A DNA stretch of 64,000 nucleotides from Macrostomum lignano (lineage: Eukaryota), in contig NIVC01001871.1 of the NCBI GenBank assembly GCA_002269645.1, positions 58,494-122,493 on the forward strand, in the 5' to 3' direction. The translations under genes were made by a program, and so were the position numbers. Shown here one piece after another: positions 1 to 55,863 of the stretch; the stretch's first letter is position 1, and every line of letters starts with the position of its first letter. Under the pieces are notes generated by a model. The model worked only from the letters and a program-made list of their open reading frames with translations. It was not told the DNA's origin and searched no databases.

Positions 1-703
1 TAGGCTAGATTAGCAATCCATTCTATTCCTTCATCCATGATGTAGGCTAGATTAGCAATCCATTCTGTTCCTGCATCCATGATGTAGGCTAGATTAGCAA
101 TCCATTCTATTCCTGCATCCATGATGTAGGCTAGATTAGCAATCCATTCTGTTCCTGCATCCATGATGTAGGCTAGATTAGCAATCCATTCTATTCCTGC
201 ATCCATGATGTAGGCTAGATTAGCAATCCATTGTATTCCTGCATCCATGATGTAGGCTAGATTAGCAATCCATTCTATTCCTGCATCCATGATGTAGGCT
301 AGATTAGCAATCCATTCTGTTCCTGCATCCATGATGTAGGCTAGATTAGCAATCCATTCTATTCCTGCATCCATTATCTAGGCTAGATTAGCAATCCATT
401 GTATTCCTGCATCCATGATGTAGGCTAGATTAGCAATCCATTCTATTCCTGCATCCATGATGTAGGCTAGATTAGCAATCCATTCTGTTCCTGCATCCAT
501 GATGTAGGCTAGATTAGCAATCCATTCTATTCCTGCATCCATTATCTAGGCTAGATTAGCAATCCATTGTATTCCTGCATCCGTAATGTAGGCTAGATTA
601 GCAATCCATTCTATTCCTGCATCCATGATGTAGGCTAGATTAGCAATCCATTCTATTCCTGCATCCATGATGTAGGCTAGATTAGCAATCCATTCTATTC
701 CTT
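1..703 (+). repeat. 42-bp minisatellite (family A), ~16 copies, truncated by window start
   Basis: Unit TAGGCTAGATTAGCAATCCATTCTATTCCTGCATCCATGATG repeated in tandem; the same unit recurs at ~35130-36070 (+) and ~46283-47135 (-). Confidence 0.97.
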
Positions 704-40818: not shown

Positions 40819-45777
<4,959 letters not shown>

Positions 45778-49445: not shown

Positions 49446-50644
49446 CTAGCGTTTCGCGTTACCATAGGAACCGCGCGCGGGCGGCACTTTAAAGCTGGCG
49501 GCGGCCTGGTACTGCAGCTGATAGGCCAGTGGGTGCACTTTGAAGCCGTACAGGCGCGGCACGAACTGATTGGCTGGCCGCTTGGGCCGGTATTCCGGGT
49601 GGACTAAAAATAGCATATGGGGAAACCCTGTGCCGAAATAGGCCCCGTCGGTGTGGTGGTGCCGCGAAGACTTCGGCGTGTAGACGTCCTGGCATTTGGG
49701 GCAGTACAGCTTCACCATGGCCTCGCCAGGCACGTCGGATAGGCCTGCAGGGTGAGGGCGATGGGGGAAGGAGTGTTGTGACCCACCCCGTTCTTATCAA
49801 ACCAGCGCCCACCCCCTTTCTTATAAAAAACGCACCCACCCCCATTCTTATCAAACCCGCACCCACTTCATTCTTATTAAACCCGCACCCACCCCATTCT
49901 TATCAAACCCGCACCCACCCCATTCTTATCAAACCCGCACCCACTTCATTCTTATTAAACCCGCACCCACCCCATTCTTATCAAACCCGCACCCACCCCA
50001 TTCTTATCAAACCCGCACTCACCCCATTCTTATCAAACCCGCATACACCCCATTCTTATCAAACCCGCACCAACCCCATTCTTATCAAACCCGCACTCAC
50101 CCTATTCTTATCAAATCCGCACCCACCCCATTCTTATCAAACCCGCACCCACCCCATTCTTATCAAACCCGCATCCACTTCATTCTTATCAAACCCGCAC
50201 CCACCCATTCTTATCAAACCCGCACCCACCCCAACCTCCTCAACACACGCGGCAGAACACACAAGAGTCCAATCGCTCACCAATGGGCATCACTGGCTGA
50301 TTCTCGCAATAGACCCGAGGACAGTAGCTGAACTCGCCATTCTGCCATTTCTCAATCATCTGGGCGATGCCGCGGTTAGTCATGATGTAGCGAGCGTGGA
50401 TGAGGCCGTACAGCATCTCGGCGGCCTGCTCAATGATGTCGGATTGGTTGGCATCGGACAGGTTGTCATCGGCTTCAAGATCGAGAATCATGTCCAGCGC
50501 CTGGTGATAGTGGGGCACCTGTTCGTTCAGGCCGGTCAAGTTGAACTTGTCCTGAATGTAGTCTTCATCGACTTCGCAGAAGAATTCGTTGCCGCGAAGG
50601 CCGCAGAACCAGGAGATCCAAGACACTTCTTCACTGGAGCTCAT
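49446..50644 (-). CDS. CSNK2B: Casein kinase II subunit beta
   Basis: Exons 50644-50281 and 49744-49446. [60 protein letters not shown]|[44 protein letters not shown] are diagnostic. Confidence 0.98.
49778..50235 (+). repeat. ~26-bp minisatellite in the CSNK2B intron
   Basis: Unit CCCATTCTTATCAAACCCGCACCCAC. Confidence 0.94.
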
Positions 50645-51176: not shown

Positions 51177-51836
51177 AAAACAGGCTGGGAAGCGTCGAAA
51201 AAATAAAACAAAATAATAAAGCTGACTAAAAAATATCAATGAAACCATCAGTATTGCAACGTAGTAGATGACAATGGAATGAGGAAAAAGTATGAATAAA
51301 CGTGAAAACTTGACATGAAGAATCTGTGCGCCTTAGCAGCATAACAATATTAACAATAAGAGATAAGTGACCTTGGATATGCACATATTGCATAGCATAG
51401 CTAGTGAGAAAATGTTATGTCTATAACATTAAAGGATCTATTAGCTAGATTTTTGTATAGATGGCCCACAGCTCATGGATAGATGCTATCTAGATATCAG
51501 AGATAGCATATATGTGCGAGTTACGAGCGTAATACTCTATAATAATAATAATAATATAGACACGATAGACAGATGCTGCTTAGATATCATATAGATACAA
51601 TAGATAGGTGCTGTCTAGATATCATATAGGATACAGTAGGTAGATGCTGCCTAGATATCATATAGATACGGTAGGTAGATACTGTCAAAATATCATATAG
51701 AAACGATAGCTAGATACTGTCTAGATACGGTAGATAGATGCTGGGTGGGTAGTGTGCAGTTGCCATCTATATCTAGACGCCTAAGTACTAAATTCTCTAC
51801 TACAAGTAGGCAATCGCAATTTTGTCCCTAACTAGT

Positions 51837-52185
51837 GCGGCAGCTTCGTATCAGACCGGCTGCACCGTCGCAAGAGATGAAGGACGAGGCTGGGCCGATG
51901 GCAACAGTCGATGGCGGGACGCCAGCAGCCGGACCAGCCGAGGCTGAAGCGGCGGCAACTGATGATGCGGTGGGCCCCAGCTTAGCCAAAGCAGACCGCC
52001 GTCTAGCCATGACAGCTAGCAACAGGCAGAGCGGTAAAGCCGCTGCAGCCAGAAGCAGAAAACGGTCTTTGTTGGGTGACGCTGCTCGAGATGATGTTGA
52101 CACAGAAGATCGGATGCTGCTAGGAATAAAACGAAACCAACGAAGCAGCAAAGAGCCTGCAAATGCAATTAAGTTAAACAAATAA
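51837..52185 (+). CDS. Putative coding exon of an unidentified small protein (~102 aa from ATG 51877)
   Basis: Acceptor TTTTGTCCCTAACTAG at 51836, then a GC-rich, Ala/charged open frame (MKDEAGPMATVDGG...RSRKRSLLG...). No family recognised. Confidence 0.45.
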
Positions 52186-52429
52186 TTGGTAGAAATTGAT
52201 TGCTATCATATACATAGAACTATAAAATAAAATTGAGTTTGCAATCAGCTTCCATACAGCATCATGCCTTAGTATTTTCTTGATTTCAAATTCATTTGGT
52301 CTGCGAATGCTTGATTAGGATAAAAAGCTCCGCATATGTATACATGTATGTATTAATGTTGTGTACTTTCTCAATCTCATTAATTAATCCGCTTTCCCTT
52401 TGCCTTTCTTGGCAACTCTTATCTAGTCC

Positions 52430-52790
52430 CTGACAGTCTTATATTCTCCCTGACAGGTCTCATCATATCGCTGACAGGTCTTATCTTGTCCCTGAAAGGT
52501 CTTATCTTGTCCCTGACAGGTCTAATCTTATTCCTGACAGATCTTATCTTGTCCCTGACAGGTCTAATCTTATTCCTGACAGATCTTATCTTATCCCTGT
52601 CAGGTCTAATCTTATTCCTGACAGAACGTATCTAATCTCGGACAGATATTATCTTGTCCCTGAAAGATCTTATCTTGTCCCTGAAAGATCTTATCTTGTC
52701 CCTGAAAGATCTTGTCTTATCTCTGACAGATCTTATCTGGTCCCTGACGGATCTTATCTTGTCTTTAACAAATCCATCTTGTCCCTGACA
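52430..52790 (+). repeat. 21-bp degenerate minisatellite
   Basis: Unit CTGACAGATCTTATCTTGTCC. Confidence 0.9.
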
Positions 52791-52913
52791 GGTTGTATCC
52801 GTCTCGTCTCTTGTCTAGACACACCTAGCTTTCCGCCTACACGCTTAACATTGTCCTAACACACCAATACTGTCCCAACACACTAACTCCTGCCCATACA
52901 CCCCACAACCACA

Positions 52914-55863
52914 TCAGCGCAACTCACTCCGCAGTTTAGACAGCCAGCTCGCAGACTCGCTCCCGGAGTTGCCGGGACAAGGCCGGTCATCTGACGAGCC
53001 AACAGTGGGCGCAGCGGCGGCAGCCAGAGGACTGGACTGAGCGGCAACATCCTCATCATCAGCAGCAGCATCGGCCATATGCTCAACAGTAGAGAATGCT
53101 GTAGAATCCGATGGAGTCAGATTCAATAGCAAATCGTTGCCCAGACTAGTTTCATACTGTTCAGCGTATCGCAAATCTAATCGAGCTGTCAATCTATCAG
53201 AGTCTGTCAGATCCGAGCCGCGATGTAAAACAGGATTATCCATCTGGCCAGATGCCTCCTCCAGCACAGCGGCCACTCGGCGAGTCTCGGCCGGGCCAAC
53301 TGGGCCGCTAAAGCTGTTATTATTGGAATTGCGACCCGCAGGCAGCAGAGCGGCAAACTGTTGCATTGGCAGGCGTTGCCAGGCAACCCGATCAACAGCA
53401 TTAGTCGGTAGGCGGATTACGCTAGCCGAAACTGCGGCTGCTGCGTCGCCGAGGTCAACCTCGTCCGGGCCGAGGCACAGCACCACCAGCGACGGACTGC
53501 CCGACGCGGCAGCTCGAAGAACGCGCCGACATTCGGCGGCCGATTCGCGGGTAGCAACCAACGCCAGGCAACGGCAATTCCCTGGGAGCAGCTCGCCGCC
53601 GCTGCCACTCTGACTATCAATCGAGTCCCAAGCGGTGAGCGAGTAGCAACAGAGTCCGAGCTGCAGTCGCAGTCGCCTACTAAAGTAAGCGGCAAACTGA
53701 ACAGCCAGCCAGTCGTCAGTGTCGCCAGAATAGTACAGCGAACTGGCCAATATAATATCGTAGCAAGCGGCCGGATCATAAGCCGATCTCGCTAACGGTC
53801 GATAGTCATCAATTGGAGTCCAAGTGACGCGCAGAATACGCGCCAGGGCGCGCCAACCGGCGCTATCAGTATCTAGAATAGTTGAGCCGGCGCCAAACTG
53901 TAACAACGGATAGGCCAGAAAGTCAACCTCCGCCGGGCTCAACAATCCGGCATCGGTGTCGCCGTCGCCAACGTCCAGATTGGTCACCAGATAGCGGCCG
54001 CTCCAGGCGGGCCGGCGGCTGACCAGGTGTACAAATAGGCGAGGTAAGAAAGCGCGGAACAATCTGACAGTGCTAGGAGTGACCAGGAACATGCAGTACT
54101 CAGCATCGGCTAGCGGGTCATCGGAGTCTTCATCGTCGCCATCTAGCCGACTGAGAAGCTGCTCAGCTGGCAGGCTCAGACAGCGGCAGGAGCGACGCTC
54201 GGCCTCCAACGCTAAACTGAGCCGTTGAACGAAGTCTTTCACCGAGCCAGCGGCCGCATCGCCCTCACTGAATAAGAGCCCGTCGGCGCTAACCAATGCC
54301 AGTTTGAAATCGCGCCGGCGGCCGTAACAGCTGCCGGATTCGAACTCGCTGGCCAGCTGGCCGACGTTAACGCCGGCCAGGCTGTCGTCTGAGAAAACGC
54401 CGCCTGACTGCGGGGAGTTTCGGCATGGCGGGGAGTTGGGGTGATTTTTAATAATCCCAAAAGCGTTGCCCTGACGGAACTAAGAGCCTGTATAGGAGAA
54501 TATTCCATAGGGGATAGGGACATGATACCCCTCATGGGATCTTTTGGGCGATTTGCTACTCTATACTCGTACTCTAAATAATCTTTGGGCGTATCTCCCA
54601 CTCCCTACAGATTCCTACGGTACAATCTGCCACTCCCTACAGGTTCCTACGGTACAATCTGCCACTCCCTACAGGTTCCTACGGTACAATCTGCCGCTCC
54701 CTACAGAATCCTACGGTACAATCTGCCGCTCCCTACAGAATCCTACGGCACAATCTCCCACTCCCTACAGAATCCTACGGTACAATCCCCCACTCCCTAC
54801 AGAATCCTACGGCACAATCCTCCACTCCCTACAGATTCCTACGGCACAATCTGCCACTCCCTACAGAATCCTACGGTACGAGCTACAATCTACCACTCCC
54901 TACAGAATCCTACGGCACAATCTGCCACTCCCTACAGAATCCTACGGCACAATCTGCCACTCCCTACAGAATCCTACGGTACGAGCTACAATCTACCACT
55001 CCCTACAGAATCCTACGGTACAATCTCCCACTCCTTACAGAATCCTACGGCACAATCTGCCACTCCCTACAGAATCCTACGGCACAATCTGCCACTCCCT
55101 ACAGAATCCTACGGCACAATCTGCCCCAATCGAGCAGGTCTGCCACTCCTTAATTCCAGCAGAAAATAACATTTACCCCGGACACATCGGGTGAGACGCT
55201 GCGCGTCTCAAATTCGTCTACAACCCGTCGGACGCGCCCGGATGCCGCCGAGTCGAACTCGTCGCCGGCGGCACCCAAGTCTTCAGGCGACTCGTTCAAC
55301 ATTAGGAAGATCGCCTTCCAGCACTCGGACTCCGCTAGCCAGATGGACTCAGCCTCGGACTCATCGAAGGTGTCGCCAGTCAAAGCTCGGAAAACAATCG
55401 GCTCTTGAGCCGAGGCCGCCTCGAAATCTAAGCCGTTAGTTAGGCCTTCAAATTCTTCCATAGCAACAAAGATTAAACGCCGTCGGCAGCGTTGGCGACA
55501 CCTGGCCCCACCGAGACCGGCCAGAAACTTTTTCAATGGTACTAGAGAGCGCGGACTGACTACTAACAGGCAGTAGTCAGATAGGGACAGCAAATTAGAT
55601 AGATAATTTCCAACTTCGTTTTCATTCTCAGCTACTGAGGCGGAGGACACGGCTGCGGCAGCGACATCGAAGGCCGAACAGCTGGCAGGCAGCGGACTGG
55701 CGCAGCCCAATAATTCATCGATTCGCCGTTTCAACAGGGCAGCGAATCGTTCAGCCAGACGGTCGGGCCTGGCCGGCACCACAGATTTCAAGGCGCGGCC
55801 ATAGTCCGAGGGCGAGACCACGGTGAACCGGTGAGGCCTGGCCTGGCCGCTGTCCGCTGCCAT
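52914..55863 (-). CDS. 726-aa protein with three tandem putative TIR-like (TIR/SEFIR/BCAP-type) alpha/beta domains
   Basis: Exons 55863-55177 (GGG|GTAAAT) and 54407-52914 (CCCCGCAG|TCA), phase 0. The gene model is well supported; the domain call rests on motif pattern only (see findings). Confidence 0.75.
54575..55135 (+). repeat. 32-bp minisatellite in the TIR-like gene intron
   Basis: Unit CTCCCTACAGAATCCTACGGCACAATCTGCCA. Confidence 0.95.

What the first reader, a model, noticed from the sequence alone, without database searches (positions are those of the whole stretch)
52914..55863. Protein apparently built from three tandem TIR-like domains
Seen: three ~150-170-aa units with the same layout. 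Each has an N-terminal strand (RFTVVS / FKLALVS / YDIILAS), a helix (DRLAERFAALL / KDFVQRLSLAL / DWLAVQFAAYF), a central strand-turn (LSDYCLLVVSPRS / DAEYCMFLVTPST / NCRCLALVATRES), another strand (RLIFVAM / RYLVTNL / SLVVLCL) and a terminal W-helix (CWKAIFLML / GWRALARIL / AWQRL). Established: TIR, SEFIR and BCAP-type TIR domains share this order, including the C-terminal W-x-x-L box. I see no LRR, transmembrane, death or ARM domain; only unit 3 has a Glu in the helix after the central strand. Inference: a cytosolic multi-TIR adaptor or scaffold, an architecture I do not recognise from characterised animal proteins. It has an acidic, disordered tail.
Basis: partly seen in the sequence, partly recalled or inferred. 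Interest (0 to 1): 0.75.

Follow-up and report, generated by a model that had tools for sequence, protein, structure and literature searches.

The report
Flatworm protein with three TIR-like domains
A gene of the flatworm Macrostomum lignano encodes a protein made of three related copies of a small alpha/beta domain that looks most like, but cannot yet be shown to be, the TIR signalling domain; it has no detectable relatives outside this species and no known function.

Summary
On the minus strand lies a real gene of Macrostomum lignano: exon 1 at 55863..55177, an intron carrying a 32-bp tandem array, and exon 2 at 54407..52914. It encodes 726 aa with three 150-190-aa units plus an acidic tail.

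Inside this protein the units resemble each other only at noise level. A 33%-identical paralogue in the same species settles the question, because its three units match each other at E 1e-13 to 2e-41 and align colinearly with those here.

A full HMMER scan of 1.84 billion proteins found only these two paralogue groups. Pfam, NCBIfam, PADLOC and PDB sequence searches found nothing.

AlphaFold2 on the six-unit alignment gives a confident alpha/beta model (pLDDT 77.9, pTM 0.80). Foldseek finds no significant match, but TIR domains supply 8 of the top 50 hits (best E 0.08, TM 0.46-0.51).

Profile-profile comparison with ten PDB-verified TIR domains is weak but colinear and specific (P 0.004-0.009; receiver, flavodoxin and GTPase controls P 0.29-0.87). 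The TIR catalytic-Glu column is not conserved.

Verdict: a lineage-restricted three-domain protein, probably a cryptic, non-enzymatic TIR-like scaffold. TIR membership is unproven and the function is unknown. Interest is moderate.

The parts
55177..55863 (-). Exon 1 (aa 1-229): start codon, unit 1 and the first part of the acidic linker
   Evidence: ORF and donor GGG|gtaaat. The junction is identical in public models. The start codon position is matched by the paralogue (MAA.. vs MAT..).
55273..55839 (-). Unit 1 (aa 9-197), alpha/beta domain
   Evidence: Coordinates verified by translation. Matches paralogue unit 1 at E 4e-32. AF2 model pLDDT 77.9, pTM 0.80.
54408..55176 (-). Intron 1, carrying a 32-bp x 16.2 tandem array at 54593..55125
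   Evidence: TRF; splice sites. Copy number differs between genomic copies: 31-32 indel columns.
52914..54407 (-). Exon 2 (aa 230-726 plus stop): linker, units 2 and 3, acidic tail
   Evidence: Acceptor ccccgcag|TCAGGC in phase 0; identical to public models.
53808..54320 (-). Unit 2 (aa 259-429), alpha/beta domain
   Evidence: Matches paralogue unit 2 at E 5e-25 and paralogue unit 1 at E 3e-10.
53325..53774 (-). Unit 3 (aa 441-590), the most divergent alpha/beta domain. It has the best box-1-like strand (YDIILAS) and has lost the second Trp.
   Evidence: Matches paralogue unit 3 at E 1e-10; alignment.
52917..53324 (-). Acidic, Ala/Ser-rich C-terminal tail (aa 591-726), probably disordered
   Evidence: pI 4.3, 22 D+E vs 10 K+R. 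Not aligned to the paralogue, whose tail is different. Disorder is inferred from composition.
51828..52156 (-). Possible exon 3 used in public models. It adds 108 aa with a hydrophobic stretch (FLLLAAAALPLCLLLAVMA). Its coding status is unresolved.
   Evidence: Canonical donor cggA|gtgagt at 52927/52926 and acceptor tttgcag|GC. Used in PAA63119.1 and UniRef models. Codon-usage score is about 0 on both strands, and the opposite strand is equally open.

Best explanation
This is a genuine, lineage-restricted M. lignano gene. Its product is a soluble chain of three tandemly duplicated alpha/beta domains followed by an acidic, probably disordered tail.

The domains are most likely very divergent ('cryptic') members of the TIR-type flavodoxin-like fold. 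They have lost the catalytic glutamate, so they would not cleave NAD+.

They would instead act as protein-protein interaction modules. Three TIR-like faces held in one chain could seed, cap or bridge homotypic assemblies of like domains, either its own paralogue or other TIR proteins. The tail would serve as a flexible tether or docking region.

Shown here: the gene structure, the three-fold internal homology, the restricted distribution and the confident alpha/beta model. Inferred: the TIR affiliation, the lack of enzymatic activity and the scaffold role.
For: **Real gene**
- Canonical splice sites, with a junction shared by independent public models.
- A 33%-identical colinear paralogue keeps the hydrophobic core pattern.

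**Triplication**
- Paralogue units match each other at E 1e-13 to 2e-41, and there are cross-unit hits to the window.

**Fold**
- AF2 on the six-unit alignment gives pLDDT 77.9 and pTM 0.80.
- Strands and helices alternate in the order expected for a five-fold beta-alpha domain.

**TIR-likeness**
- Foldseek places TLR10, PdTIR (x2), TcpB (x3), TIR-STING and TIR-1 among the top 50 of 350,542 chains. TIR hits have the highest probabilities after Tm-1 (0.72, 0.60) and target-normalised TM of 0.46-0.51.
- hhalign of the units against ten TIR domains verified against PDB scores 21.7, P 0.0087, over 92 colinear columns. The global alignment covers 140 columns at P 0.004.
- Each positional unit pair hits TIR in the same register, at P 0.004, 0.004 and 0.03.
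- Controls: receiver P 0.55, flavodoxin P 0.87, small GTPases P 0.29, reversed P 0.39. Of 100 column shuffles 0 reach the score; of 100 block shuffles 2 do.
- Motifs line up: first strand [FY]-[DKH]-x-x-[LV]-x-[ST] (YDIILAS in unit 3); 'L..SEYC-hhh-[ST]..S' against TIR 'I..S...h.VhS..y'; W-x-x-[LI] in the last helix of 5 of 6 units.

**Non-catalytic**
- The TIR WCxxEL glutamate column aligns with Leu/Arg in all units.
Against: - No TIR-type HMM (Pfam TIR, TIR_2, SEFIR, TIR-like; PADLOC; NCBIfam) reports any of the six units (no such family listed at E <= 10; the filters drop most matches above about 0.1).
- The unit profile finds no PDB sequence at E <= 10.
- hhalign probability is 4.6%, which HH-suite does not count as a hit.
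- Foldseek has no match at E <= 0.001, and rmsd values are 7-9 A. The non-TIR Tm-1 N-terminal domain ranks first (E 0.046, TMq 0.43), and TIM barrels and P-loop proteins fill the list.
- The expected second strand and BB-loop region is low-confidence in the model, and no RDxxPG motif exists.
- The model rests on only six sequences, and I could not inspect strand order.
- There are no expression, localisation or interaction data. The gene ids were absent from the supplements of five M. lignano papers.
- Differences between near-identical genomic copies (7 nonsynonymous to 3 synonymous, and 3 to 0) are too few to show purifying selection.
Confidence: 0.5

Rival explanations
1. The units are a new, lineage-specific alpha/beta domain with no evolutionary link to TIR. 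The resemblance is the generic one shared by all small beta-alpha sandwiches. The protein does something unrelated to TIR-type signalling, for example a structural or tissue-specific role, as many Macrostomum-restricted genes do.
For: - All HMM libraries and PDB sequence searches are negative.
- Foldseek has nothing at E <= 0.001, and Tm-1, TIM-barrel and GTPase hits are interleaved with the TIR hits.
- Nothing in BFVD.
- hhalign probability is 4.6%.
- The family is confined to two paralogue groups of one species among 1.84 billion representatives.
Against: - The weak signals all point the same way and in the same register. TIR is the only family hit repeatedly (8 of the top 50).
- Three independent unit pairs each align colinearly to TIR at P 0.004-0.03, while three control folds do not.
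- Box-1-like and box-3-like motifs sit at the expected strand and helix.
Confidence: 0.33
2. The units are catalytically active TIR domains (NAD+ hydrolases or cyclases, like SARM1 or bacterial and plant TIRs), and the protein is an effector rather than a scaffold.
For: - The best-scoring TIR subset in hhalign is the enzymatic pair SARM1 plus TcpB (score 21.8).
- The paralogue carries Glu directly after the central strand (SEV, SEES, TEES), and unit 3 here has RESAAE.
Against: - In the profile alignment the catalytic Glu column (WCxxEL) is Leu/Arg in all six units.
- The Glu after the strand is replaced by Pro in units 1 and 2 of the window protein, so it is not conserved in the family.
Confidence: 0.05
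3. The mature protein is membrane-anchored. The stop at 52914 is spliced out and a third exon (52156..51828) adds 108 aa with a 19-residue hydrophobic segment, so the TIR-like domains would sit at a membrane like the TIR-plus-TM half-receptors of Hydra.
For: - Strong donor (A|gtgagt) three codons before the stop, and strong acceptor (tttgcag|GC), in frame for 108 codons.
- Both NCBI (PAA63119.1, 831 aa) and UniRef models use this junction.
- The exon is identical in three genomic copies, while the 3' flank differs by 5%.
Against: - Codon-usage score of the exon is about 0 (-0.05 bits/codon, against +0.36 for exon 2). The opposite strand is open over the same block and scores slightly better (+0.07).
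- No Pfam match on either strand.
- There is no signal peptide.
- The charge distribution (RRR after the segment) would put the large N-terminal part outside the cell, which is implausible.
- The paralogue has no similar tail.
Confidence: 0.25
4. The reading frame is a chance ORF in GC-rich DNA or a decayed pseudogene, and the 'domains' are not a functional protein.
For: - Two of the other genomic copies are annotated as truncated or frameshifted proteins (P0005, P0007).
- Nonsynonymous differences are at least as many as synonymous ones between copies.
Against: - The frameshifts are single-base deletions in homopolymer runs (CCC>CC, TT>T), typical of long-read assembly errors.
- A paralogue at 33% identity keeps the frame, the three-unit layout and the core residues over 517 aligned positions.
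- AF2 folds the unit confidently.
- Exons are GC-rich islands between AT-rich, repeat-filled introns with canonical splice sites.
Confidence: 0.03

Closest known systems
TIR domains of signalling adaptors and receptors (MyD88, TIRAP/MAL, TLR1/2/10; Pfam PF01582, PF13676)
   Same: - Size of about 140-190 aa, and the alternating strand/helix order in the AF2 model.
- A [FY]D-like first strand, the 'S...hhhhS' central strand and a W-x-x-L last helix.
- The best recurrent Foldseek family and the only fold with a colinear profile alignment.
   Different: - No HMM match.
- No BB-loop RDxxPG.
- Inserts between the second strand and the central strand.
- Three copies in one chain, with no death, LRR, Ig or TM domain.
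- Similarity is below every accepted significance threshold.
Cryptic TIR domain of BCAP/PIK3AP1 (from my own knowledge: recognised by structure, not by sequence profiles)
   Same: A precedent for a TIR-fold domain that standard HMMs miss and that acts as a non-enzymatic adaptor module.
   Different: BCAP has one such domain followed by DBB, ankyrin and coiled-coil parts. No sequence similarity to it was tested here, because I had no verified sequence.
[quoted passage not shown]
   Same: Cytoplasmic proteins built mainly or only of TIR domains. They are proposed as alternative adaptors in animals without canonical TLRs; flatworms lack TLRs (PMC8609888).
   Different: Those proteins are found with the Pfam TIR models and are widespread across phyla. 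This family is invisible to those models and was found only in M. lignano.
N-terminal domain of tomato Tm-1 (PDB 3wrx, 3wrw, 3wrv)
   Same: Top Foldseek hit (E 0.046, TMq 0.42-0.43), also a three-layer alpha/beta domain.
   Different: TM falls to 0.37 against the isolated NN domain, rmsd is 8-12 A and identity 8-10%. There is no sequence or profile link, and no shared motif was identified.
SEFIR domain (Pfam PF08357) and CheY-like receiver domains
   Same: The same general flavodoxin-like class.
   Different: - SEFIR: no Pfam hit. By my own knowledge SEFIR lacks the box-3 Trp helix that this family keeps.
- Receiver: hhalign P 0.55, with one aligned column.

Membership tests
TIR domain superfamily | Match to a curated TIR-type profile (Pfam TIR PF01582, TIR_2 PF13676, TIR-like, SEFIR; PADLOC and NCBIfam TIR models) | tested here: not met
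   No such family reported for the whole protein or any of the six units (listing cut-off E <= 10; HMMER filters drop most matches above about 0.1).
TIR domain superfamily | Three-dimensional similarity to solved TIR structures (flavodoxin-like, five beta-alpha repeats) | tested here: inconclusive
   - AF2 unit model has pLDDT 77.9 and pTM 0.80.
- Foldseek hits: TLR10 E 0.081, prob 0.72, TMt 0.46; PdTIR TMt 0.51; 8 TIR chains in the top 50.
- Nothing reaches E <= 0.001, and a non-TIR hit ranks first.
- Strand order could not be inspected.
TIR domain superfamily | Profile-profile homology to TIR alignments | tested here: inconclusive
   - hhalign score 21.7, P 0.0087, prob 4.6%, 92 colinear columns.
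- Unit pairs give P 0.004, 0.004 and 0.03.
- Controls give P 0.29-0.87, and shuffles reach the score in 0/100 and 2/100 trials.
- Both profiles are shallow (6 and 10 sequences).
TIR domain superfamily | Box 1: (F/Y)D-x-F-[IL]-S-[YF] on the first strand | tested here: inconclusive
   The six units read YDIILAS (unit 3), FKLALVS, RFTVVSP, and in the paralogue YKFSILA, FKLILMT, YHTVVFT. The aromatic residue and the [ST] are kept, but Asp occurs in one unit only.
TIR domain superfamily | Box 2 / BB loop: RDxxPG after the second strand | tested here: not met
   No conserved Arg-Asp...Pro-Gly. Paralogue units 1 and 2 have PSSSG, and the window units have no common motif. The region has pLDDT below 50 in the model.
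TIR domain superfamily | Box 3: F/W-x-x-L motif in the last helix | tested here: met
   The six units read CWKAIFLML, GWRALARIL, CWKALYFIL, SWQILYRIL and TWTTIVTLV. Unit 3 of the window has QQFAALL (W>F). The motif aligns with the FW..L column of TIR in the global hhalign.
Enzymatic (NADase) TIR domains, SARM1 / bacterial / plant type | Conserved catalytic glutamate in the helix after the central strand (WCxxEL context) | tested here: not met
   The column aligns with Leu/Arg in all six units. Other Glu residues nearby are not conserved between the paralogues. The alignment in this stretch has low confidence.
TIR domain superfamily | Homotypic TIR-TIR association | not testable with these tools
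CheY-like receiver domains | Profile similarity to receivers | tested here: not met
   hhalign against four receivers gives P 0.55 with one aligned column.
P-loop NTPases (suggested by GIMAP and GBP Foldseek hits) | Walker A motif GxxxxGK[ST] | tested here: not met
   The motif is absent from the whole protein. hhalign against small GTPases gives P 0.29.

The most novel reading that the evidence does not exclude
Flatworms, which have lost Toll-like receptors, evolved a private family of three-TIR proteins so divergent that no profile finds them. One chain would carry a pre-assembled three-protomer TIR seed that nucleates or blocks signalling filaments of the remaining TIR adaptors (MyD88- and SARM-like). 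That would be a new way of wiring TIR signalling without receptors.
Probability: 0.12. Interest if true: 0.65.

Novelty: new variant of a known kind. Interest (0 to 1): 0.4.

Why it matters
If the TIR assignment holds, the family adds a cryptic, tandem three-TIR architecture to an animal lineage that lacks TLRs. It would be another case, after BCAP, in which TIR-fold modules escape sequence profiles, so inventories of TIR proteins in invertebrates would be undercounts.

Three covalently linked TIR-like domains would also be a natural tool for studying how TIR assemblies are seeded.

If the assignment fails, the family is still a confidently folding, species-restricted domain present in three copies per protein. 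That is a clean example of recent domain birth or extreme divergence followed by internal triplication, in a model flatworm where RNAi and transgenesis are available.

Tried and rejected
- **Whole protein and three units against Pfam at E <= 10:** nothing.
- **Six units against Pfam, PADLOC and NCBIfam:** only a chance LytTR hit at E 0.066.
- **PDB sequence search:** nothing with the protein or with the unit profile.
- **Word-seeded searches with the paralogue N-terminus and with the unit alignment:** these did not even recover the known family members. The 8000-candidate list was probably saturated by low-complexity words, so these two searches are uninformative, not negative.
- **Single-sequence AF2 of aa 1-590:** useless (pLDDT 39.6).
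- **Foldseek against viral structures:** nothing.
- **Expression:** the gene ids Mlig033572, Mlig023861, Mlig018063 and Mlig030938 appear in no indexed paper and in no held supplement of five M. lignano papers.
- **Selection test between genomic copies:** too few differences to use.
- **Codon-usage test of exon 3:** undecided.
- **Rejected ideas:**
  - Fusion with casein kinase II beta, as named in UniRef. CK2beta has its own ATG at 50644 and is a separate gene in the NCBI annotation.
  - Pseudogene status of the other copies. The frameshifts are homopolymer deletions.
  - Receiver, flavodoxin or P-loop identity.
Full report
**What is at the coordinates**

The window is eukaryotic DNA with GC-rich exons between AT-rich, repeat-filled spacers. 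On the minus strand an ORF starts at ATG 55863 and runs to a phase-0 donor, GGG|gtaaat, at 55177. A second open frame begins behind the acceptor ccccgcag|TCAGGC at 54407 and ends at the stop at 52914. The 769-bp intron holds a 32-bp tandem array of 16 copies. Joining the exons gives 726 aa.

**Source and public annotation**

The protein is 100% identical over its full length to UniRef A0A1I8HRW8 of the flatworm Macrostomum lignano, and it uses the same exon junction. Cluster members include the NCBI entries PAA63119.1, PAA79909.1 and PAA85030.1, all named 'hypothetical protein'.

- The NCBI contig NIVC01001871.1 is 99.98% identical to the window over 4.7 kb.
- UniRef names the protein 'casein kinase II subunit beta' because its model runs on into the next gene. 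That gene has its own ATG at 50644, matches Pfam CK_II_beta at E 7e-47, and is separate in the NCBI annotation. The fusion is an annotation artefact.
- Two further genomic copies (L003, L004) are 98-99.5% identical. Their truncated protein models result from single-base deletions in homopolymer runs, most likely assembly errors.

**Checking the observation**

Within this protein alone the three units are not significantly alike. Local alignment scores exceed shuffles by z = 2.7, 1.6 and 0.65.

The decisive evidence is a paralogue. An exhaustive HMMER scan of 1.84 billion representative proteins returned only the query's own cluster and P0002 (M. lignano PAA64332.1), at 33% identity and E 4e-47.

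- P0002 aligns colinearly with the window protein across all three units: 168 identities in 517 aligned positions.
- Its units are plainly repeats of each other: unit 1 vs 2 at 44% identity and E 2e-41, 2 vs 3 at E 3e-23, 1 vs 3 at E 1e-13.
- Each window unit matches its positional counterpart at E 4e-32, 5e-25 and 1e-10.
- Cross-unit matches also occur, for example window unit 2 vs paralogue unit 1 at E 3e-10, and shifted tblastn hits.
- Pair profiles give unit 1 vs 2 at 97.9% probability and 2 vs 3 at 87%.

The three units are therefore homologous, and the triplication predates the split of the two paralogues. One correction applies: in unit 3 'AWQRL' corresponds to an upstream conserved Trp, and the last-helix motif is 'QQFAALL'.

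**Distribution**

No relative outside M. lignano was found at E <= 0.001 among 1.84 billion representatives. Two word-seeded searches failed to recover even known members and carry no weight.

**Fold**

Single-sequence AlphaFold2 failed (pLDDT 39.6). With the six-unit alignment, unit 1 folds with mean pLDDT 77.9 and pTM 0.80. The model reads:

- strand 3-8
- helix 27-44
- a low-confidence stretch where the family alignment suggests a second strand
- helices 56-64 and 73-86
- strand 87-94
- helices 96-107 and 112-119
- strand 122-126
- helix 139-142
- a short strand at 147-148
- helices 160-168 and 171-182

This is the alternating pattern of a small three-layer alpha/beta domain.

Foldseek against 350,542 PDB chains gives no match at E <= 0.001. 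The first hit is the N-terminal domain of tomato Tm-1 (E 0.046, TMq 0.43). TIR domains follow repeatedly:

- TLR10 at rank 3 (E 0.081, prob 0.72, TMt 0.46)
- PdTIR at ranks 10 and 23 (TMt 0.51)
- TcpB at ranks 17, 29 and 33
- oyster TIR-STING at rank 25
- C. elegans TIR-1 at rank 48

The remainder are TIM barrels, P-loop GTPases and similar proteins. The viral library adds nothing. TIR chains are a tiny fraction of the PDB, so eight of the top 50 is a clear enrichment. That is my inference, not a computed statistic, and none of the individual scores is significant.

**Profile tests**

No curated HMM (Pfam, PADLOC, NCBIfam) reports a TIR-type match for any unit.

I verified them against PDB chains at about 2 bits per residue over their full length.

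- hhalign of the unit alignment against this TIR alignment scores 21.7, P 0.0087, probability 4.6%, over 92 colinear columns. These pair helix A with helix A, the 'G-x-S-C' strand with strand B, 'L..SEYC-hhh-S..S' with 'I..S...V.V.S..y', and strand D with strand D.
- Global mode aligns 140 columns at P 0.004 and places the family's terminal Trp helix on TIR box 3.
- The three positional unit pairs, tested separately, hit TIR in the same register at P 0.004, 0.004 and 0.03.
- Controls: four receiver domains P 0.55, three flavodoxins P 0.87, three small GTPases P 0.29, reversed units P 0.39. Of 100 column shuffles 0 reach the score, and of 100 eight-column block shuffles 2 do. The control sequences were from memory and unverified.

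The signal is specific to TIR among the folds tried, but it is far below what HH-suite treats as homology.

**TIR hallmarks**

- Box 1 is partly present. The aromatic residue and the Ser/Thr on the first strand are kept, and YDIILAS in unit 3 is close to the consensus.
- Box 2 (RDxxPG) is absent.
- Box 3 (W-x-x-L) is present in five of six units.
- The catalytic Glu column of NADase TIRs aligns with Leu/Arg in all six units. The paralogue's Glu right after the strand is Pro in window units 1 and 2.

**Mechanism**

Shown here: three homologous, foldable alpha/beta domains in one chain; a 61-residue acidic Ser/Gly-rich linker between units 1 and 2, which is where the intron sits; an 11-residue link between units 2 and 3; and a 136-residue acidic Ala/Ser-rich tail with pI 4.3. 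No hydrophobic N-terminal segment that could act as a signal peptide is visible by eye in the sequence. The paralogue carries different tail features, a Ser/Thr-rich stretch and a long (QERQKRE)n charged repeat. The conserved business end is therefore the three-domain head.

Inferred: the head is a non-enzymatic TIR-like interaction module. Three linked TIR faces could seed, cap or bridge assemblies of like domains. I put about 0.5 on this overall. That breaks down as about 0.95 that it is a real three-domain protein, about 0.6 that the fold is TIR-type, and less for the scaffold role.

**The C-terminus**

Public models skip the stop codon. They use a strong donor (cggA|gtgagt) three codons upstream and a strong acceptor (tttgcag|GC) at 52157/52156, which adds 108 residues including FLLLAAAALPLCLLLAVMA-RRR.

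The exon is identical in three genomic copies while the 3' flank differs by 5%. However, its codon usage is neutral, the opposite strand is equally open and scores slightly better, and neither strand hits Pfam. Whether the protein is soluble or membrane-bound therefore remains open.

**Context**

TLRs are absent from M. lignano and other flatworms (PMC8609888). Planarians still have about 20 TIR-domain proteins, including MyD88- and SARM-like ones (PMC7958881). TIR-only and other non-receptor TIR-domain proteins, some with two TIR_2 domains, are known in cnidarians and other invertebrates and are proposed as alternative adaptors (PMC5094078, PMC6321704). A protein with several TIR domains is therefore not unprecedented. 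A triple one that no profile detects and that is confined to one lineage would be a new variant.

**Verdict**

TIR is the leading but unproven fold assignment, NADase activity is unlikely, and the immune role is speculation.
- The gene is an uncharacterised, lineage-restricted 'hypothetical protein'.
- Interest is moderate (0.4).

Noticed in passing
window 49446..50644 (-): Casein kinase II beta gene directly downstream on the same strand. It has its own ATG at 50644 ([16 protein letters not shown]...) and matches Pfam CK_II_beta at E 7e-47. UniRef models A0A1I8HRW8 and A0A1I8HX14 fuse it to the three-domain gene, which is why that protein carries the misleading name 'Casein kinase II subunit beta'.
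   Followed up: yes
window 54593..55125; 52417..52793; 50000..50233; 51554..51727: Every intron or spacer around the gene holds a short-period tandem array (32 bp x 16, 21 bp x 18, 26 bp x 9, 35 bp x 5). The 32-bp and 21-bp arrays differ in length between genomic copies (21-32 indel columns), while the surrounding sequence is nearly identical.
   Followed up: partly
window 51828..52185, both strands: A GC-rich block is open on both strands: 117 aa on the minus strand (used as exon 3 in public models) and 116 aa on the plus strand. Codon usage favours neither clearly, and neither hits Pfam. It could be a coding exon, a small antisense gene or UTR.
   Followed up: partly
window 43347..44301 (+): An exon of a T-box transcription factor (…[16 protein letters not shown]…; Pfam T-box E 2.9e-13). 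It runs directly into a tandem repeat that reads as [14 protein letters not shown] in different frames.
   Followed up: partly
L003 (NIVC01000609.1) and L004 (NIVC01000350.1), positions matching window 55812, 55673, 53781, 53551: Single-base deletions in short homopolymer runs break the frame in two other genomic copies and explain the truncated public models P0005 and P0007. They look like long-read assembly errors rather than real pseudogenes.
   Followed up: yes
L002 3001..6165 (NIVC01001761.1), paralogue P0002/P0003: The paralogue is encoded without an intron and lacks the acidic linker in which the window gene has its intron. After the three units it carries a Thr-rich stretch and about 250 residues of (QERQKRE)n charged repeat. 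The far C-terminal part of its annotated ORF looks like non-coding read-through.
   Followed up: no
(tool behaviour): The word-seeded protein search returned nothing for the paralogue's N-terminal half or for the unit alignment, although the database holds exact members.
   Followed up: no
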